A DNA stretch of 64,000 nucleotides. Source: Oikopleura dioica (lineage: Eukaryota > Animalia > Chordata). Position 1 is the first letter of the stretch; each line of letters opens with the position of its first letter. The translations under genes and the position numbers were made by a program. The notes under the pieces are model-generated. The model was not told the origin of the DNA. It searched no databases and saw nothing but the letters and a program-made list of their open reading frames with translations. Location of the stretch: the NCBI GenBank assembly GCA_907165135.1, contig OU015567.1, forward strand, positions 7,626,001-7,690,000, given 5' to 3'. Below are positions 1 to 29,800 of the stretch, in pieces.

Positions 1-427
1 CTAAAAGTCGCAATATGATGAGCTGAGGTGCCTTTTGCGCAAACGCCCGACGATTTCTCTGTCCAGCGATTGTCGAAATTTCAAGGTCTGGTCCAAGGGT
101 CGATTCTTCGTAAACTTCTCTCGATTTTTGGTGAAAAGTGGCGAAAGAATTATGTTTTTCTCAGTATTTTAGGTTTTCCCCGGCGTGCGTGCGTGGTTGC
201 GTGGGCGCGACTTTCGGCGCGTGGGTCGTGGTGGCGCTCGTGCGGTGGCGCTCGCTCGGGGTGGTGTTGGTGTGGTGCGGAAAATTCTCTGAGTGGAGTT
301 TCTCCGGCGGCGCGGTGGCGGTTGGTGATTCGGTTCCCCTCGACTCCGCTGACGGCCAATCAGCGTCCAAGTTGCGAAACTTCGGTTGTCGATGGCGGAA
401 AAATTTATCTTTTCTCCAACGGGACTA

Positions 428-692
428 CTCTGATACCACTGAAGGGATCCTAGCTTCTGCTGAATCTCCCACTTCTAGCGTAGTTTGCCTGCTCTCTATA
501 TCTGGACGAGTGAAGAAAACGAGTAAAGTATCTTTGACGTCTGTATTTCGAGCTGGAGTAAAATAGAGGTTAATTCACGAACTGCGTGAATTACCGAATG
601 GAGAGAAATACACGGCGGCGACCGAGCAAAGCTCGATCTAGATAAGCAAGTGACCTTAGGGGACGAGGGAGTCTAACGAATCTAAGATCCCA
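428..692 (-). mobile_element. Putative LTR retrotransposon 5' end (PBS plus ~250-bp LTR) in reverse orientation inside a midasin intron; internal region runs off the left edge
   Basis: 428-438 reverse complement is TGGTATCAGAG (classic tRNA-iMet-type PBS), 1 nt from a TG..CA-bounded segment 440-692 with imperfect terminal repeats (gggatcctagctt / gggatcttagatt). 1-427 reads as a low-complexity CA-rich leader on the minus strand. No second LTR or gag/pol in the window. Confidence 0.45.
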
Positions 693-696
693 ATAG

Positions 697-2985
697 GGAT
701 CAGCAAGACGAGTCAGAATTCAACGCGGACGAACAAGCGCAGCCGCCCCCTGAGAACTTCGAAACAGAAGCACCAGAAGTCGACGATGTTGATTTCGAAG
801 AAAAAGATGACGGTGAGAATCAAGACGAAGAATCAAAGCAGGATGATGATGATGGGATCGAACTTGACGATGCTCCGCCTGAAGGTGAGTTTTTAATTTG
901 ATTTTCATTGCTGAAGATTTTTTTAGGAATGAGTGATGCAGAGGGCGAAGAAGAAAACACTGATAACAACGAAAATAGCAAAGAAAATGAAGATCAAGAA
1001 GAGGAAGAAGATGCGGATGAAGGCGGAGACAAAACAGAAAACGCTGATGATGATCAGGAAAAGATTTTAGATTTACCCATTTTTGATATTCATTATTTTG
1101 AGTCATGGTTTCAAATCTCATGAAAAGACAACTGAAGATGATTTGAACAAAGATATTTCTGCTCCTCGTAAAGGCGAAACACCAATGGCCGAAAATCAGC
1201 AGAACCACGAGAGAGCAGCGGAAACTTGCGAAGCAACTGATATGGAGCAGGACAATGGAGATAACACTGGAGGCGAAGAGGCTTCTGGAGATCAGACTGG
1301 CGCATCGGAGGACAAATCTGATGGAACCAAAGGCAATCAGCAGACACAGGGTAACCTTTTTCTCCTTATCTTTGTTAATAATTCAAATTTTATGTTTAGT
1401 TGAGCGGCCAAAACCAAAAAGAGGCGATGAAAAATCATCAGATTCAGCTGAGCTGGAAAAACACGAAACAAAGGAAAAAGAGTCCCAAGTGGAAAATAAC
1501 GAAGAGGAGCCAGAAACTGGAGTTGAATTCGAGCGTGACAACGCTGCGAAAAAAGAAGTTCTTGACGAAGCAGAAGAAGGAACTCGGGAACAAATCGAAC
1601 GGATGGAAATCGAAGATGGGGAAAAAGAGCAAAAAGAGGAGCCGATGGAGGTGGAGCACGAGCCAAACTCGAAGCTTGAATCGAAGTCCGGTGAGAAAGT
1701 TGATGAGGAAAAGGTCAAACATTCGGAAAATGACGAAGACGAGAGCAATGAAACGGGAAATGAGGATGTCGAAATGCAGGAAGACAAGGAAGAGAGGGAG
1801 AATGTTATTATGACGAATCATTTGCAGAAAAGCTCGTTGGAGAAAAAGATGCGCGACTTGGAGAGCATCGAGCGTCACATCCCCGAATTGATCGGAATGA
1901 AGCCAGCTGGTGAAGAGGCGCAAATGGCGTGGAGAGGAATCAACATGCTCCAAGCGTCCCAAGCGCAGAGACTGGCGGAACAGCTACGCCTCATTCTTGA
2001 GCCGAAGAAAGCTTCTGCACTGAAAGGTAAAATTTCGTTAGTTACATTTCTTTACAATTGAATCAGGTGATTACCGAACTGGAAAGCGGCTGAACATGCG
2101 AAAAGTAATTCCGTACATCGCCTCCCAATTCCAAAAAGACCGTATTTGGCTGAGACGCACGAAACCGCGAAACAGAAATCACCAAATTGTGCTTGCTCTC
2201 GGTAAGGATCCAATTATTTTGTCAGAAATAACAGTTTGATTTCAGATGACTCGGAAAGTATGATCGACAACAAATCCAAAAAGCTGGCTTTCGAGTCACT
2301 GGCGTTGGTTTCCTCGGCGTTGAAGCTAATTGAAATCAAGAATTTGGGCGTTTTTCGCTTCGGTGCTGAAACAGAGTGCATACTTCAACTGGGTGACGAG
2401 TTGAATGACCAAGTAGGCACGGTTCTTTATCTTATCATAAATTTAAAAGAAGTAAGAATTATCAACGAAAAATTATCGGTAAAAAAAGATAAAAACCGTT
2501 ATAAAGGTGGACATATCATCAGCCGCTGCACATTTGAGCAACAAGCCACTGACATGGTGAAAATGCTGGATTTTGCTCGGAGGAGCTTCAGAGAAGCGGA
2601 CAGCGAAGGGGTCGCTAGCAAATTGCTGATTGTGATAACAGACGCGCAAGGCATTTTCAAACAGGGTCGGGAAGCCGTGGCCGATCAAGTCAAGCTTGCT
2701 CGCCAGCGAGGAATGATGGTGATGCTTGTCGTTGTTGACAATGGCGAAAAATCTATTACGGAAATCAGGGTAAGTTATTTTGGATCAGGAATTACAAATG
2801 TAATGAATCAATTTCATCGCTGTTTTCAGTCGGCAACGTTCAAAGATGGAAAAGTAAGCTGGAAGTCTTACCTTGACGATTTCCCTTTTCCCTACTATGT
2901 GATCTTGCGGAATGTGGAGAGGCTTCCGGAAGCGATCGCGAATGCGTTGCGGCAGTGGTTTGAAATTTTGGAGTCTGAATCTTGA
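697..2985 (+). CDS. MDN1: Midasin C-terminal part (acidic D/E-rich tail plus MIDAS/vWA domain), multi-exon, 5' partial
   Basis: Spliced translation gives a D/E-rich region, then LAEQLRLILEPKKASALKG-DYRTGKRLNMRKVIPYIASQFQKDRIWLRRTKP, DDSESM (MIDAS) and YLDDFPFPYYVILRNVERLPEAIANALRQWFE, all characteristic of the midasin C-terminus. Confidence 0.93.
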
Positions 2986-15367: not shown

Positions 15368-18300
15368 ATGGAAAAGTATGAATTCGGAAGTAAAGATGTT
15401 CTCTGGTGTCAGATTGAAAACTGGTACCCGATTTTCAAAAGGTTTTGCCCAAAGACGGAATTCTTCCCGCTTGATAAGGTAATTCTCTGACCACTTTAGT
15501 CGCTTGCTGATCTGATTCTAGAGCGCGCTCAACTATCTGAAATCAAATGACAGCATCGTTTTACCAGAAGAAGAGCCTGAACCAGCCGGTCCTCAGCCGG
15601 ATATCTTCGGTCAAATTGACTCGGATGATGCTTTCTCTGACTGGTCCACGGACGAAGAAGCGGAGTCTGTTCCACACGTGAATCCAGTCCCAGATCTTTG
15701 CAGAAAAATTCGCCGGGTCATTGGCGAGCGTGCTAGAAAAGCTGTCGTTCCCAAATTGAACTGGAGTTGTCCCTCTGACGCGCTGCATTTTTCGCCAGAT
15801 CAGTCGCTTAAATCAGGGATGGAAATATGACAAAATTTTCCAGCGGCACCGGCACGGCACGGCACAACCAAAATACCCGTGCCGCGGCACGGTACGGCAC
15901 GGCACGGCACAAAATTCAATAATGGGGTGCCGCGGCACCACGGCACGGCACGGCACAAATTTGAGTCATATAAATTATTAATTAAAATGAAAAAAATTAA
16001 AGCTGCTAGTGTTCTTATAGAATTTTGACAAGGTTTAAATGAAAACCATAATAAAATTAAAATCTTGGGTAATTTGAATTTTTCAAACAATGGGTGAGGG
16101 TGGGGTTGGGGACGTTACAAAGATTGACAGCAATGTTCCCAGCCAATGTCAAGCCCCTTAAATTCAAAAATCAAGGAACGGGGCTGAAACGGCCCGAAGG
16201 GCCGTCAAGCCCTTAAATTCAAAAATCAAGGAACGGGGCTGAAACGGCCCGAAGGGCCGTCAAGCCCCTTAAATTCAAAAATCAAGGAACGGGGCTGAAA
16301 CGGCCCGAAGGGCCGTCAAGCCCCTTAAATTCAAAAATCAAGGAACGGGGCTGAAACGGCCCGAAGGGCCGTCAAGCCCCTTAAATTCAAAAATCAAGGA
16401 ACGGGGCTGAAACGGCCCGAAGGGCCGTCAAGCCCCTTAAATTCAAAAATCAAGGAACGGGGCTGAAACGGCCCGAAGGGCCGTCAAGCCCCTTAAATTC
16501 AAAAATCAAGGAACGGGGCTGAAACGGCCCGAAGGGCCGTCAAGCCCCTTAAATTCAAAAATCAAGGAACGGGGCTGAAACGGCCCGAAGGGCCGTCAAG
16601 CCCTTAAATTCAAAAATCAAGGAACGGGGCTGAAACGGCCCGAAGGGCCGTCAAGCCCTTAAATTCAAAAATCAAGGAACGGGGCTGAAACGGCCCGAAG
16701 GGCCGTCAAGCCCCTTAAATTCAAAAATCAAGGAACGGGGCTGAAACGGCCCGAAGGGCCGTCAAGCCCCTTAAATTCAAAAATCAAGGAACGGGGCTGA
16801 AACGGCCCGAAGGGCCGTCAAGCCCCTTAAATTCAAAAATCAAGGAACGGGGCTGAAACGGCCCGAAGGGCCGTCAAGCCCCTTAAATTCAAAAATCAAG
16901 GAACGGGGCTGAAACGGCCCGAAGGGCCGTCAAGCCCCTTAAATTCAAAAATCAAGGAACGGGGCTGAAACGGCCCGAAGGGCCGTCAAGCCCTTAAATT
17001 CAAAAATCAAGGAACGGGGCTGAAACGGCCCGAAGGGCCGTCAAGCCCTTAAATTCAAAAATCAAGGAACGGGGCTGAAACGGCCCGAAGGGCCGTCAAG
17101 CCCCTTAAATTCAAAAATCAAGGAACGGGGCTGAAACGGCCCGAAGGGCCGTCAAGCCCTTAAATTCAAAAATCAAGGAACGGGGCTGAAACGGCCCGAA
17201 GGGCCGTCAAGCCCTTAAATTCAAAATCAAGGAACGGGGCTGAAACGGCCCGAAGGGCCGTCAAGCCCCTTAAATTCAAAAATCAAGGAACGGGGCTGAA
17301 ACGGCCCGAAGGGCCGTCAAGCCCCTTAAATTCAAAAATCAAGGAACGGGGCTGAAACGGCCCGAAGGGCCGTCAAGCCCCTTAAATTCAAAAATCAAGG
17401 AACGGGGCTGAAACGGCCCGAAGGGCCGTCAAGCCCTTAAATTCAAAAATCAAGGAACGGGGCTGAAACGGCCCGAAGGGCCGTCAAGCCCCTTAAATTC
17501 AAAAATCAAGGAACGGGGCTGAAACGGCCCGAAGGGCCGTCAAGCCCCTTAAATTCAAAAATCAAGGAACGGGGCTGAAACGGCCCGAAGGGCCGTCAAG
17601 CCCTTAAATTCAAAAATCAAGGAACGGGGCTGAAACGGCCCGAAGGGCCGTCAAGCCCTTAAATTCAAAAATCAAGGAACGGGGCTGAAACGGCCCGAAG
17701 GGCCGTCAAGCCCTTAAATTCAAAAATCAAGGAACGGGGCTGAAACGGCCCGAAGGGCCGTCAAGCCCCTTAAATTCAAAAATCAAGGAACGGGGCTGAA
17801 ACGGCCCGAAGGGCCGTCAAGCCCCTTAAATTCAAAAATCAAGGAACGGGGCTGAAACGGCCCGAAGGGCCGTCAAGCCCCTTAAATTCAAAAATCAAGG
17901 AACGGGGCTGAAACGGCCCGAAGGGCCGTCAAGCCCTTAAATTCAAAAATCAAGGAACGGGGCTGAAACGGCCCGAAGGGCCGTCAAGCCCTTAAATTCA
18001 AAAATCAAGGAACGGGGCTGAAACGGCCCGAAGGGCCGTCAAGCCCTTAAATTCAAAAATCAAGGAACGGGGCTGAAACGGCCCGAAGGGCCGTCAAGCC
18101 CCTTAAATTCAAAAATCAAGGAACGGGGCTGAAACGGCCCGAAGGGCCGTCAAGCCCCTTAAATTCAAAAATCAAAGAACGGGAATTGTCCTTTATATTT
18201 ACCGATAATAAAAATTTTATGTGAAAATAGTGTTATACTGTGCCGCGGTGCCGCAACCAGATTTTATTCTGCGGCACGGCACGGTACGGCACGTGCCGTG

Positions 18301-19523
18301 CCGTGCCATGCCGCTGTGCCGTGCCGTGCCGTGCCGCTCAGATTTGCATCCCTGGCTTAAATGCATGAGCCCGAACGAGGTGTTTCTCCTTCTCAAATCG
18401 TCCGACAAAATTAATCACGACTTGACTTATCCTTTTGAAAACTGCAACGACTCTGATGATTCTGAAAGTCCGGTTTATACACTGGCTCTGCAAGAATTTG
18501 CAAAACTCGCTCCTTCTCGTGAATTTCGTTGCTTTATTCGCGACAAAAAGCCAGTTGCGATTTGTTCCAGATCGACTACATTCAGCGATGACGAGGAAGA
18601 CTTTTTCGACGAAGTTTACGAGGAGCTTTTGGAGTTTTTAGATCTACAAATCATTCCGAAAGTAGAACTAAGTTCATTCGTAATTGATGTTTACAAAAAA
18701 GAAGCGTCAGGGTTTCTGATTTTTGGATTCAGTCCTTTTGGGCTACCAACCTGGAGCATGTACTTTTCATGGAAGGCCTGGTTCGAATTCCGTTTAACCC
18801 GTTAACTGGGCATCCGATCTTATGCGTTAACGGGCGCGTGGCAGTCTAATGTCCACGCACCTTTTGGTGTTTTCTGAGAAATAGGGATGAGAAAAATTAA
18901 TTCCAAGTGTAAAATCTGATTCAGAAGCGTCTTCTCTTTCTCCTTCATCTTTTTGTTTTGTTTTTGTGATTCGTTTAGGGGTTGAAAATTGAGGTCAAAG
19001 TTACGTCAATTTTCGACGCTGAGATTGGAGAAAAAGGGAAAGAAGGGAAAGGCGGGCGATTTGTATTATTCTTTCCCTTTTTCTCGCTCACTGAAGTTTT
19101 TCTTTCGCTTCTCCCGACCTGAATTTCATGCCGATTTTTTTCAAAATCACACAAACAGATAGAGAATCGATTGAATTTTTAAAAAATACAAAAATTTTTG
19201 ATAAAAACTTGAGTTTCTCCTATCTTATGGCTCTACAATGGCTGCGTGGCCGTGAGACAGCCACGCGCCTGTTAACGGGTTAAATAAGCTAGCAATCAGC
19301 ATAAATTTTTAACCGAGCAAAGGAACTATATGACGACGAATTTGGAGTCGAAGAGCCAGTCTATCGGTTCAATGATGGAGAGCAAGTGATAGGCTTGAGC
19401 CAGGACAATCGAGTACCACTGGACGCCATTCACATATCGCAAGGATTAGACTCGCAGAAATTAGTAGATTACATGCAACTTGTCAAAGAAGGAAAGCTTG
19501 ATGGAGAAGGACTACAGTCGTAA
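15368..19523 (+). CDS. CDC123: Cell division cycle protein 123 (ATP-grasp eIF2 assembly factor), interrupted by two transposon insertions
   Basis: WCQIENWYPIF, VVPKLNWSCPSDA, SLK|CMSPNEVFLLLKSSDKINHDL, REFRCFIRDKKPVAICSR, VIDVY, FSPFG and RVPLDAIHISQGLDSQKLVDYM all match CDC123 motifs. Confidence 0.9.
15814..18354. mobile_element. Non-autonomous hAT-like DNA transposon (2541 bp) in a CDC123 coding exon
   Basis: 8-bp TSD GCTTAAAT (15806-15813, 18355-18362). 13-bp TIR CAGGGATGGAAAT / ATTTGCATCCCTG (1 mismatch). Inverted subterminal (CGGCA)n/(TGCCG)n arrays. No transposase ORF. Confidence 0.92.
16149..18183. repeat. Tandem array of 36 full plus 1 partial 55/56-bp units inside the hAT-like element
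   Basis: Unit CAAGCCC(C)TTAAATTCAAAAATCAAGGAACGGGGCTGAAACGGCCCGAAGGGCCGT, counted line by line. Units differ only in homopolymer length. Confidence 0.98.
18798..19279. mobile_element. piggyBac-type MITE (482 bp) in a CDC123 intron
   Basis: TTAA on both flanks (18794-18797, 19280-19283), CCCGTTAAC/GTTAACGGG termini, and an internal inverted repeat CGTTAACGGGCGCGTGGCAGTCT displaced from the left end only. Confidence 0.85.
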
Positions 19524-26800: not shown

Positions 26801-29800
26801 CTTCAACGAAATTCGACAAGCTTAGGCCCGAATTGCTCGTTGAAGTTGTGAGACGCTGTTCCGCCCGAGGAAATGATGATGGAAATATGCTTCTTGTCTC
26901 CGCGCTTTCCTTATTGTCATCAATGGCTAGGTGTAATAGTAGAAAAATCGACCCCCCGATCGCCCTTTTTAAACTTTTAATTTCATGCAGAATAAGAATC
27001 CTTATGTCGCGGCGATCATTTTGGTACCAAATTCATCGCAATCGGACTTGGTTTTCGGCCGATAAGGAGCATTTGAAGGCCCAAAATAAGCACTAGAAAT
27101 TTTCTAGCGCCCGGAAAGGGATGAATACTCCATCTCATCAGTACGCCACTTGTTCCAGATTGTAGAGCAGGCTCTACTCTATCGGAATCTACTCGCAAAA
27201 GTTGTGAACAGGGGCTCTAGTGAGAACCAGCGCCCGAAGAAGGTCGAAAAATGAAGCAAAATTGGGGTGAAATCATCAGTCTGAGATCATGGAAGTCAAA
27301 TTTGGCCTTGATTTTGCCCCATTTTTTGAGCTTCTTCGGGCGCTGGTTCTCACGAGGGCCCCTGTTCACAACTTCTGCGAGTAGATTCCGATAGAGTAGA
27401 GCCTGCTCTACAATCTGGAACAAGTGGCGTACTGATGAGATGGAGTATTCATCCCTTTCCGGGCGCTAGAAAATTTCTAGTGCTTATTTTGGGCCTTCAA
27501 ATGCTCCTTATCGGCCGAAAACCAAGTCCGATTGCGATGAATTTGGTACCAAAATGATCGCCGCGACCTAGGGATTCTTATTCTGCATGAAATTAGAAGT
27601 TAAAAAAGGGCGATCATGAGGGCGATTTTTCTACCGTTACACCTATCAATGGCATCGAAGACACCCGACAAGGTGCTTCAAAGCTTGATGTCTGTTTTCA
27701 CTTTCATGGGCGCCGGGTTGCTCCCACGAGCTGACGATCGCTATTCCTTCCATTCGATTCAAGAAACCATCAAATGCGTAGTCCCACCACTTTTGAAAGC
27801 TTCGGGAAAACGTAATCAACTTGGAAATATTCTTGACGTTTTCTGCACGGCACTTCCTCATGTTCCTGTTCATCGACAAGGAGCTGTTTTTGAGTCTCTA
27901 ATTATCAGATGCGATCCAGAAAAGGCCCTCTGGTTGACTCTTGTTCAGCTAGCCGTTAAACACGTGAAAAATTTCAACGGAGAAGGAAAAGACGAATCCA
28001 TATTGGATCCCTCTGTTTACACAGAACTCATGTCTCTTTTGGTCAAGCGATTTCCCGTTGAAGTTGTTCTCCAGGCTGCAGTTGAAATACTTTCGTTCTT
28101 GAAGGAAACTGGCTTCGATGCTTCTGATGAACTTGATTTGAAAATGAATACTAAACTCACTGGTGGACGAGTTATGCAGGTCAATTTCTATTTAGTCTCT
28201 TTCCTCAACAGATTGTTTGGATCAATGGACTTCCTTCATACACAACTAGCGCAGATCACTGATGTCGAGCAAGAATCAATCGTTCAAATTTACAGAGAGC
28301 TTCTTGAGAAGTCCTTTGCTTACACGGAAACAGTACAGCCACGACAGAGCGAAAAAACCTTCAAGGGTCTGGCGTCGAAGGTCAACGGAATTATTGAGAA
28401 GATTCTTGGTCTTCTACCTAGCGTTGAGTTCGCCCAGTGCGTAACAGGACTCCTTATGAATTCTCTAAAAACATCAACTGACTGGTTGACTCTTCAATCG
28501 CTCGAAGTTCTCTGTACTCGCCTGAGACGCAGTGATGCTGATGAAACGGAGACACTTATCGAAGCTGGTATTCTGGAACACTTGGCGAAAGTCTTCGAAA
28601 ATGAGTCCATCACATGTATCAATCTCGCCGCAAAGTCTGTTAAATTGCTAGCGAAGCTTTCTGGAGAGCATCAACTCAAAAAATTCAAAGGATTGATGCC
28701 TTCGCTGAAGAAGCTTTTGACTGCGTCTGATAAGTGCCATATTGGAATGAAAGATAGCGCTTTCGGACCCGTTGTTCTCTGCTGCGCTGTTCTTTTGGCA
28801 AGATTGAAAGTTCAGGTAAAAATATTTTGCCAAAAGTCTTCTAATTATGTCAAAATTATAGGCACTGGGGCATTTGAACTGGACTATTGAATCAATCATC
28901 GCGGGTATCACGAAGGCTGACTCTGAAACGCTCAAAATTATTACCGTTGCATCGCTTGGAAAAATTTTGTCGGAAATGAGTGGGTTCGTATCCCCACACT
29001 TGCCAATGATTTTGACGGCACTCAGCCAGTTTTCACTAAAGAACGATTCTGAATTGGAACGACGAGTTGCTATTTGCATCAAAGAACTTGGTAAGCCAAA
29101 TTTTAAAGACTTTTTTTTTTATCATTTTTAGGCGGCTTTCCTTCCAGAGTTCTTCTTCCTGAGATCGCCTCTGTTTACTCGACTTTGGACGGCAGCTCTG
29201 TTGTGACTCTCCTAGCGATTGTCGAAAAGCACATTGATAGTTTGGAAAAAGGAGCTGCTGTTAGACAACAGTCAGTTTTCCAGGACTTTTTCTTGCGTGC
29301 TCTGGCTTTCAGAGAGGAACATCCGGACATCGATGCTGCTTCTGCTACTGAAATTGAAACTGCAACTTGTAACGCAATGGTGCAGTTGGCTCTTCGACTT
29401 CCTGAAGCTTCTTTGAGGTGCAAACATCCATGAAAATAGAATTTCAATCGATTTTTAGACCTTTCTTGTTCAAGACATTCAACTGGGCGGCAAATGAAGG
29501 GGGTGGAGCTGCTCGGCTATTCCCACTTTACATACTTTATGGGAAGATGACTGAGGTCATGAAGTCAATGTTCCTCATCTTTACAGGATCACTTACACCG
29601 CACTTTATTGATATTTTGGTAACTCGTTCTTTTCCCCCATATTGTGTTGATTCTTTGCTTTAGCCCAAGATCACGGACAGAAGCAATGCATTTACGAATT
29701 CTGCACCGCTGAAGACCGAATTACTCCGACGAATGCTACAAGTTCTCTCGCTCATTTTCGTGAATGACACTGGAGAGTTTTTGGATGAAAGCGCGATCAA

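What the first reader, a model, noticed from the sequence alone, without database searches (positions are those of the whole stretch)
15806..18362. A 2.5-kb satellite-loaded hAT-like element inside an exon of CDC123, with a possible in-frame GG-AG splice-out
Seen: the insertion splits DQSLK|CMSPNEV. Read-through meets a stop within 6 codons (TCA GGG ATG GAA ATA TGA). The only frame-preserving option keeping the conserved motifs is donor TCAG|GGATGG (15817) to acceptor GCTCAG|AT (18341), adding 8 aa (SDLHPWLK). The donor is non-canonical (GG, with A at +3, like the GAA donors seen elsewhere in this window). I recall GG donors as a minority class in O. dioica but could not verify another one here. 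CDC123 is essential in yeast. Inference: either a tolerated TE-intron that relies on the relaxed 5' splice-site recognition of this lineage, or a null allele carried heterozygously.
Basis: partly seen in the sequence, partly recalled or inferred. Interest (0 to 1): 0.75.

Follow-up and report, generated by a model that had tools for sequence, protein, structure and literature searches.

The report
Young hAT transposon breaking CDC123 exon
A 2.5-kb non-coding jumping element full of a 56-base satellite has very recently landed in a coding exon of the single-copy, probably essential CDC123 gene in the Okinawa Oikopleura dioica reference genome; it most likely marks a broken allele carried by the one sequenced male, and nothing shows it to be a newborn intron.

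Summary
A 2541-bp element (15814-18354) splits exon 2 of the only CDC123/D123 gene of this genome (O. dioica OKI2018_I69, chr 2). It has a perfect 8-bp target duplication (GCTTAAAT), 13-bp inverted ends (CAGGGATGGAAAT / CAGGGATGCAAAT) and 36.6 copies of a 56-bp satellite. It is a non-autonomous hAT-type element from a family of about 22 copies. A sibling copy has ends that are 100% identical, so the insertion is very young.

Six ocean-metagenome contigs of related lineages (72-97% identical in DNA) are colinear and have the site empty. The published annotation (CAG5111819.1, 139 aa) ends in the stop inside the element.

Against it:
- I could examine no transcript of this lineage, so nothing supports it.
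- It is not the only in-frame option.
- Both sites lie in a very stable terminal stem.
- The 8 residues would go directly in front of an invariant Cys, where none of 18 homologues has an indel.

Best reading (about 0.7): a recent, unfixed loss-of-function allele kept when the haplotypes were merged. About 0.15: a tolerated transposon intron.

The scan has noted dozens of similar exon insertions in this same assembly.

The parts
15368..15478 (+). CDC123 exon 1 (37 codons, MEKYEF...PLDK)
   Evidence: It matches the N-terminus of the annotated protein P0046 and of the orthologues P0012 and P0105.
15479..15521 (+). Intron 1, 43 nt, GT...AG
   Evidence: Sequence. The spliced orthologue P0012 reads LDK|NALNYLK across this point.
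15522..15813 (+). CDC123 exon 2, part before the insertion (ends ...DQSLK plus the first base of the Cys codon)
   Evidence: Pfam D123 profile positions 22-112, E 9.6e-13.
15806..15813 (.). Left copy of the 8-bp target-site duplication GCTTAAAT
   Evidence: Present as a single copy in the empty sites of L041 and L057-L060.
15814..18354 (+). Non-autonomous hAT-type element, 2541 bp, with no protein-coding capacity of its own
   Evidence: About 22 family copies (45 termini) in the genome, 14 of the 16 other copies checked have perfect 8-bp duplications.
15814..15826 (+). 5' terminal inverted repeat CAGGGATGGAAAT. It contains the proposed donor CAG|GGATGG (first intron base 15817).
15828..15830 (+). 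In-frame TGA that ends the read-through product (...SLKSGMEI*). It is the end of the published 139-aa model CAG5111819.1.
15845..15957 (.). 5' subterminal arrays of the CGGCA pentamer, inverted relative to the 3' arrays
   Evidence: families D3, I1-I25.
16148..18183 (.). 36.6 tandem copies of a 56-bp satellite. Each unit carries an AG|GAA match to the non-canonical donor consensus.
   Evidence: Other family copies carry 0-15 units. The satellite is dispersed in at least 30 loci.
18240..18338 (.). 3' subterminal TGCCG/CGGCA arrays
18340..18341 (+). Proposed AG acceptor (GCCGCTCAG|ATTTGC), directly upstream of the 3' inverted repeat
   Evidence: It is hypothetical and has no RNA support.
18342..18354 (+). 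3' terminal inverted repeat ATTTGCATCCCTG. The G variant is shared only with the sibling copy at C1:16487452-16488591.
18355..18362 (.). Right copy of the target-site duplication GCTTAAAT
18363..18775 (+). CDC123 exon 2, part after the insertion (CMSPNEV...FSWK). The Cys codon starts at 18362. It is intact, with no stop or frameshift.
   Evidence: Pfam D123 profile positions 113-249, E 1e-31.
18776..19322 (+). Intron 2 (GC...AG), enlarged from about 62 nt to 547 nt by a second transposon
   Evidence: P0012 reads FSWK|ELYD across this point.
18798..19279 (.). 482-bp piggyBac-type MITE (TTAA duplication at 18794-18797 and 19280-19283; ends CCCGTTAAC...GTTAACGGG) inside intron 2
19323..19523 (+). 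CDC123 exon 3 (66 codons plus stop)

Best explanation
This is a very recent cut-and-paste insertion of a non-autonomous, satellite-carrying hAT-type element into exon 2 of the single-copy CDC123 gene (the eIF2-assembly factor). It creates a loss-of-function allele. Translation runs 5 codons into the element and stops, giving a 139-aa product that lacks D123 profile positions 113-300, the part that holds the invariant LLKSSD, EFRCF and DxY motifs. Shown here: the insertion, its youth, its absence from related lineages, and the truncated published model. Inferred: the sequenced male carried it on one chromosome only, with an intact copy on the other, and the haplotype-merging step of the assembly kept the insertion-bearing haplotype. 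The same route would explain the many similar exon insertions that this scan has noted in the same assembly.
For: 1. It is a real transposition. The element has a perfect 8-bp duplication and inverted ends. The exact empty site occurs in L041 (88% nt identity), L042, and the four ocean-metagenome contigs L057-L060 (94.5-97% identity), with an 8-bp overlap of the two alignment blocks.
2. It is very young. The sibling copy at C1:16487452-16488591 is 100% identical over 164 bp at the 5' end and 185 bp at the 3' end and shares the private TIR variant. The satellite array is 99% homogeneous. The gene around the element shows no decay: polarised changes on the window's lineage are 10 synonymous and 1 non-synonymous, and downstream of the element 8 and 0.
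3. The genome is OKI2018_I69. It was assembled from one male with about 3.6% heterozygosity, and a 99.3-Mb diploid draft was collapsed with HaploMerger2 (PMC8008620). The assembly therefore carries one arbitrarily chosen haplotype at each locus.
4. The published model g6091 (CAG5111819.1 = P0046, 139 aa) ends ...DQSLKSGMEI. The annotators' pipeline, which accepted 11% non-GT-AG introns, placed no intron over the element. No other protein on record carries that end.
5. Every protein on record from the related lineages, including spliced full-length ones (P0012 at 338 aa, CBY21132.1 at 339 aa), reads SLKCMSPNEV.
6. CDC123 is single-copy in the assembly, so no paralogue relaxes the constraint.
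7. Of 16 other family copies, none lies in a recognisable conserved exon. That is what selection against exon hits would give, and it does not fit free tolerance.
8. Unchecked notes of this scan report at least 37 similar cases in this assembly. For two of them (PRP4, RPS29) they report transcripts only from the empty allele.
Against: No read-level data were available, so heterozygosity is inferred and not seen. An in-frame GG...AG removal with the AG|G-A context typical of O. dioica non-canonical donors does exist (PMC7072748), and O. dioica splices about 11% non-GT-AG introns. The intact downstream exons fit continued function as well as they fit youth. The annotation pipeline may simply have missed a rare junction type. 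My recollection that HaploMerger2 prefers the longer allele was not checked.
Confidence: 0.7

Rival explanations
1. Tolerated transposon intron. The permissive U2 spliceosome of O. dioica removes 15817-18341 as a GG-AG intron. This leaves CAG, the 13-nt 3' inverted repeat and the duplicated 8-mer (24 nt) in the mRNA. The protein gains SDLHPWLK between K and the invariant C and still works, so this would be an intron at birth.
For: The frame arithmetic holds. The donor CAG|GGA has the upstream AG and the +3 A reported for O. dioica GA donors. The weak acceptor context is no worse than this gene's own intron 2 (ccgagcaaag|ga), and intron 2 in this lineage already uses a non-canonical GC donor. 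The 24-nt remnant has no stop in any frame (read directly from the sequence), so any sense-strand insertion of this family would be frame-neutral. The terminal stem would bring the two sites together. The insertion point is a short loop in the AlphaFold model of the orthologue (residues 127-133 without secondary structure). Transposon-derived introns are documented in larvaceans (Fritillaria borealis, summarised in PMC11282704; Oikopleura is listed under 'transposon insertion' in PMC3443670).
Against: There is no RNA support, and the published model reads through to the stop. At 2525 nt the intron would be about 50 times the median intron length of 49 nt. Donor and acceptor are both buried in a duplex of -177 kcal/mol (z = -14.7). 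Thirty-six AG|GAA decoy donors lie inside the element. The 8 residues would sit directly before an invariant Cys in a confidently modelled segment (mean pLDDT 88 for residues 131-140) where none of 18 homologues from animals, fungi and plants has an indel. The insertion is absent from all related contigs, so there is no evolutionary sign of tolerance. Other family copies avoid recognisable exons.
Confidence: 0.15
2. Partial rescue by another route. Options include a different in-frame splice, such as GA(15818)...AG(18369), which replaces CMS by SG, or GT(15803)...AG(18369), which removes 6 aa. Another option is expression of the two halves as separate polypeptides, with spliced-leader trans-splicing at an AG in front of the ATG at 18365.
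For: There are 32 in-frame G*-AG combinations. An ATG follows the insertion directly (MSPNEV...). O. dioica uses operons and trans-splicing (general knowledge).
Against: All the shorter alternatives delete the invariant Cys or other invariant residues. No protein starting at MSPNEV is on record. A split at this point cuts a single ATP-grasp-type domain.
Confidence: 0.06
3. Assembly artefact. A repeat-containing read was joined wrongly, so the element is not really in the gene.
For: The assembly is Nanopore-based, and the length of a 2-kb satellite array is hard to assemble. The 55/56-nt unit variation (CCC versus CCCC) looks like homopolymer noise.
Against: A chimera would not produce a perfect 8-bp duplication of the target flanking complete inverted ends at a site that is contiguous in six other contigs. 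Only the number of satellite units is in doubt.
Confidence: 0.03

Closest known systems
Non-autonomous hAT elements (MITE-like) with internal tandem repeats
   Same: It has an 8-bp target duplication and short inverted ends that start with CAGGG. It has subterminal short repeats and no coding capacity. The internal satellite varies in copy number between copies, from 0 to 36 units.
   Different: No autonomous partner with the same ends was found. The hAT transposase-bearing element seen in this genome has ends CAGGGTGTCAAAT. This copy carries the largest array of its own family. A sister family (ends CAGGGTGGGGAAAG) carries arrays of up to about 4 kb of the same satellite.
MITE-derived non-canonical introns of Fritillaria borealis (Henriet et al. 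2019, as summarised in PMC11282704)
   Same: The host is also a larvacean. A TIR/TSD-bearing element interrupts coding sequence, and removal by a permissive U2 spliceosome at non-GT sites is proposed.
   Different: In Fritillaria the introns are short, numerous, fixed, shown to be spliced, and mostly AG-AC or AG-AT. Here there is a single 2.5-kb, unfixed insertion with a hypothetical GG-AG removal that would not be exact (+24 nt) and has no RNA evidence.
Introners (Micromonas and Aureococcus; Huff, Zilberman and Roy 2016, cited)
   Same: A DNA transposon whose ends could supply splice sites, with a constant remnant after removal.
   Different: Introners are high-copy families found mostly inside genes as working introns, and their excision is precise. 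This family has about 22 copies, and only this one sits in a recognisable exon.
Other young transposon-in-exon alleles of the OKI2018_I69 assembly noted by this scan (PRP4, RPS29, MTAP, HGSNAT, ANKLE1 and others)
   Same: The same genome and the same pattern: a young element, an empty site in other animals or ocean samples, and an in-frame splice that exists only on paper.
   Different: They involve other element families and genes. I did not re-test those notes.

Membership tests
hAT superfamily, non-autonomous element | 8-bp target-site duplication | tested here: met
   GCTTAAAT is present on both sides of the element. 14 of the 16 other copies checked have perfect 8-bp duplications, and most have TA at positions 4-5. 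As I recall it, the nnnTAnnn pattern is that of the Buster branch of hAT; this was not checked.
hAT superfamily, non-autonomous element | Short terminal inverted repeats beginning 5'-YARNG | tested here: met
   CAGGGATGGAAAT and CAGGGATGCAAAT match at 12 of 13 positions.
hAT superfamily, non-autonomous element | Precise insertion shown by an empty site | tested here: met
   L041, L042 and L057-L060 carry one copy of the 8-mer and no element.
hAT superfamily, non-autonomous element | Mobilised by a hAT transposase (DDE core plus hAT dimerisation domain) that recognises these ends | tested here: inconclusive
   The element has no gene of its own. PF05699 gives 9 matches in the genome. One such element (L055:2194-8131) has ends CAGGGTGTCAAAT, matching at 9 of 13 positions. 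No transposase-bearing copy with this family's ends or CGGCA arrays was found.
Spliceosomal intron derived from a transposon (introner-like) | Removed from the mature mRNA | not testable with these tools
   No transcript of this lineage was reachable. The published model reads through. The spliced-junction 20-mer has 0 hits in JGI contigs, but that scan had no power, because the same collection holds neither allele of this lineage.
Spliceosomal intron derived from a transposon (introner-like) | Splice sites of a class used by the host, and frame kept | tested here: inconclusive
   CAG|GGA...CTCAG|A keeps the frame at +24 nt. The AG|G-A context agrees with the published GA-donor logo. That GG donors are a used class in O. 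dioica rests on my recollection of Denoeud et al. 2010, which I could not read.
Spliceosomal intron derived from a transposon (introner-like) | Family members recurrently occupy intron positions inside genes | tested here: not met
   Among 16 other copies, no flank has a Pfam hit, and only 2-3 have a junction-spanning ORF of about 100 aa or more.
Spliceosomal intron derived from a transposon (introner-like) | Presence shared by the population or lineage | tested here: not met
   The element is absent from all six related contigs, including four at 94.5-97% identity. The truncated product is on record only from the reference annotation.
CDC123 / D123 (PF07065), eIF2-assembly ATP-grasp protein (host gene) | D123 domain over the gathering threshold, and orthology to solved CDC123 structures | tested here: met
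   The two exon pieces score 48.4 and 110.7 bits against a cut-off of 24. The orthologue P0012 matches human CDC123 8PHD at E 1.7e-45 and S. pombe 4ZGN at E 5.8e-37. The gene is single-copy in the genome.

The most novel reading that the evidence does not exclude
The element is removed by Oikopleura's relaxed spliceosome as a GG-AG intron. The family's ends (CAG|GGA at the 5' end, CAG|A in front of the 3' repeat) always leave a stop-free 24-nt remnant, so every sense-strand exon insertion of this hAT family would be frame-neutral. That would make it a built-in way for a transposon to survive in a genome that is mostly coding, and this locus would be an intron at birth in an essential gene.
Probability: 0.15. 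Interest if true: 0.7.

Novelty: new member of a known kind. Interest (0 to 1): 0.3.

Why it matters
As a single locus it is ordinary: a young transposon that knocks out one allele. Two things give it some value.

First, it warns users of the OKI2018_I69 reference. The annotated CDC123 (139 aa) is a broken allele and not the species' gene. The scan's other notes suggest the same is true of dozens of genes, probably because heterozygous insertions survived haplotype merging.

Second, this set of dated exon insertions with known empty sites is a ready-made natural experiment. It could show whether the permissive larvacean spliceosome can neutralise transposon hits, and public reads and RNA-seq of the Okinawa culture could answer that directly.

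The dispersal of one 56-bp satellite to at least 30 loci by two hAT-type families is a clear example of transposon-borne satellite spread.

Tried and rejected
1. Autonomous partner. The longer relatives (L045-L047) turned out to be a sister family filled with the same satellite; L045 has no ORF of 120 aa or more and the four L047 ORFs have no Pfam match. The hAT transposase loci have different ends and no CGGCA arrays.

2. Other family copies in exons. I rebuilt the empty sites in a script and ran Pfam on ten flanking ORFs. There were no hits. L011 and L006 may lie in lineage-specific genes, and this was left open.

3. Transcripts or other animals of the same lineage. Exact look-ups of the MSPNEV... 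product and of the annotated 139-aa protein returned nothing. Cluster listings held no Okinawa-type full-length protein.

4. Two scans of JGI metagenome contigs. The spliced junction gave 0 hits. A degenerate pattern for both alleles gave only 4 chance hits in unrelated contigs. That collection therefore has no power here.

5. Denoeud et al. 2010 (PMC3760481) is not held, so the frequency of GG donors could not be cited.

6. Pericentromeric location as an explanation was rejected. The window lies about 1.9 Mb from the chr 2 centromere gap.

7. Joined model. The exons were searched separately by reference, and the orthologue P0012 was used for the alignment and the fold. The only joining was inside a script that checked frame and stops and printed 22-residue junction peptides.

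8. I met no contig that I took for human.
Full report
WHAT IS THERE

The window is G000:C5:7626001-7690000 of a 64.28-Mb genome in 19 sequences. The annotated protein that matches it is named Oidioi.mRNA.OKI2018_I69.chr2.g6091 (CAG5111819.1). The genome is therefore the Okinawa Oikopleura dioica reference, OKI2018_I69. It was assembled from one male with about 3.6% heterozygosity, and a 99.3-Mb draft was collapsed with HaploMerger2 (PMC8008620).

The gene is CDC123/D123:
- exon 1: 15368-15478
- intron 1: a 43-nt GT-AG intron
- exon 2: from 15522 to 18775, interrupted by the element
- intron 2: 18776-19322
- exon 3: 19323-19523

Without the insertion the exons add up to 338 codons. That matches the spliced orthologues P0012 (338 aa) and CBY21132.1 (339 aa). 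Each exon was searched by reference.

THE INSERTION

A 2541-bp element lies at 15814-18354. It is flanked by a perfect 8-bp direct repeat of the target (GCTTAAAT). It ends in 13-bp inverted repeats, CAGGGATGGAAAT and CAGGGATGCAAAT. Inside are inverted subterminal arrays of the CGGCA pentamer and 36.6 copies of a 56-bp satellite at 99% identity.

Pfam D123 matches the left exon piece up to profile position 112 and the right piece from position 113. The element therefore cuts one continuous domain, between K and the Cys of DQSLK|CMSPNEV. Read-through gives SGMEI and then a stop.

IT IS A REAL AND RECENT TRANSPOSITION

Six contigs from ocean metagenomes are colinear with the window and lack the element. 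The two alignment blocks overlap by exactly the 8-mer. The contigs are L041 (88% identity), L042, and L057-L060 (94.5-97% identity, among them two labelled as Tara Oceans).

The family has about 22 copies, counted as 45 termini. Among the 16 other copies checked, 14 have perfect 8-bp duplications, mostly with a central TA. They carry 0-15 units of the same satellite.

One copy, C1:16487452-16488591, is 100% identical to this one over 164 bp at the 5' end and 185 bp at the 3' end. It alone shares the G variant in the 3' inverted repeat. Against 3-5% divergence from the Tara contigs, zero differences in 349 bp place the insertion very late.

The coding sequence around the element is undamaged. 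Changes polarised with L041 on the window's lineage are 10 synonymous and 1 non-synonymous. Downstream of the element they are 8 and 0.

CLASSIFICATION

The 8-bp duplication, the CAGGG... ends, the subterminal repeats and the precise empty sites meet the structural criteria of a non-autonomous hAT element. The genome has hAT transposase genes (PF05699, 9 matches). One complete element has ends CAGGGTGTCAAAT. No transposase-bearing copy with this family's own ends was found, so the mobilising partner is unknown.

A sister family has ends CAGGGTGGGGAAAG, an 8-bp duplication and a length of 3.8-4.2 kb, and it is filled with the same satellite. Together the two families scatter this satellite over at least 30 loci.

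CAN IT BE SPLICED OUT?

It leaves 24 nt and gives DQSLK-SDLHPWLK-CMSPNEV.

Points in its favour:
- The donor CAG|GGA has the upstream AG and the +3 A described for O. dioica GA donors (PMC7072748).
- About 11% of introns in this assembly are non-GT-AG.
- This gene's own intron 2 uses a GC donor here, against GT in L041.
- The 24-nt remnant (CAG, the 13-nt repeat and the 8-mer) is stop-free in all frames, so it would be frame-neutral at any site.

Points against:
- The published model, from a pipeline that accepted non-canonical introns, has no intron there and ends in the element.
- It is one of 32 in-frame G*-AG combinations, and six of those keep every residue.
- The two ends of the element can pair into a duplex of -176.8 kcal/mol (z = -14.7 against shuffles) that buries both sites.
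- The satellite adds 36 AG|GAA decoy donors.
- At 2525 nt the intron would be about 50 times the median of 49 nt.
- The eight residues would go directly in front of a Cys that is invariant in 18 homologues from animals, fungi and plants, at a place where none of them has an indel.
- In an AlphaFold model of the orthologue (mean pLDDT 76, pTM 0.71) the site is a short ordered loop (residues 127-133) leading into a beta-bridge at C134 and the helix that carries LLKSSD. Mean pLDDT for residues 131-140 is 88.

The fold does not exclude tolerance, and it does not suggest it either.

POPULATION-TYPE EVIDENCE

Every related protein on record reads SLKCMSPNEV. The ...SGMEI end occurs only in the reference annotation. 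CDC123 is single-copy.

Among 16 other family copies, none sits in a recognisable conserved exon. In a genome with one gene per 3.7 kb this suggests that exon hits are removed by selection and not neutralised.

I could not reach reads or transcripts of the Okinawa lineage. Two scans of JGI contigs had no power.

VERDICT

The labels 'hAT-like' and 'satellite-loaded' are supported. Heterozygosity is inferred and not seen.

From memory only, HaploMerger2 tends to keep the longer allele. If so, that would enrich the reference for such insertions.

Notes of this scan list at least 37 similar cases in this assembly. For PRP4 and RPS29 they report transcripts only from the empty allele. I did not test those notes.

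The transposon-intron reading stays open at about 0.15. It is cheaply testable with the public reads and RNA-seq.

SIDE OBSERVATIONS

- Intron 2 holds a 482-bp piggyBac-type MITE (TTAA duplication) that the related contigs also lack.
- The sibling hAT copy is nested in an oppositely oriented array of the same satellite.

Noticed in passing
window 18794-19283: A 482-bp piggyBac-type MITE (TTAA duplication; ends CCCGTTAAC...GTTAACGGG) sits inside intron 2 of CDC123 and enlarges it from about 62 nt to 547 nt. It is absent from L057-L060 and L041. The family has 25 or more copies, and the best is 94% identical.
   Followed up: partly
window 18776-18777 versus L041:1637-1638: Intron 2 of CDC123 has a GC donor (aag|gcctgg) in the window and in the Tara contigs, but a GT donor (aag|gtcccgg) in the 88%-identical lineage L041. 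This is a GT/GC donor difference between close lineages.
   Followed up: partly
genome-wide, e.g. G000:C5:12193522-12197358, C4:10735922-10737933, C1:4348103-4350268: The 56-bp satellite of the element occurs in at least 30 arrays on all chromosomes at 96-98% identity. Many of these arrays lie inside hAT-type non-autonomous elements, so the satellite appears to be spread by transposition.
   Followed up: partly
L045:490-4298, L046:487-4294, L047:516-4707: A sister family of 3.8-4.2-kb elements has ends CAGGGTGGGGAAAG, 8-bp duplications, CGGCA subterminal arrays and interiors filled with the same satellite. L045 has no ORF of 120 aa or more and the four L047 ORFs have no Pfam match; L046 was not scanned for ORFs.
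   Followed up: partly
G000:C1:16487452-16488591 (L013, L022): The 100%-identical sibling copy (1140 bp, 14 satellite units, lacking positions 165-334 of the 5' region) is itself inserted into an oppositely oriented array of the same satellite at about 93% identity. This is a nested insertion.
   Followed up: partly
L055:2194-8131 (G000:C4:376493-382430): A 5.9-kb element with 39-bp inverted ends (CAGGGTGTCAAATCGCGGGGG...) carries a hAT dimerisation domain, so it is a candidate autonomous hAT. About 7 near-identical transposase copies occur in the genome.
   Followed up: no
window 26920-27653 and window 1-699: Notes of the scan report two more transposons in coding exons of essential genes in this same 64-kb window: a foldback element in HEATR1/UTP10 and an LTR element in midasin. 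Three such hits in one window fit a haplotype rich in insertion alleles.
   Followed up: no
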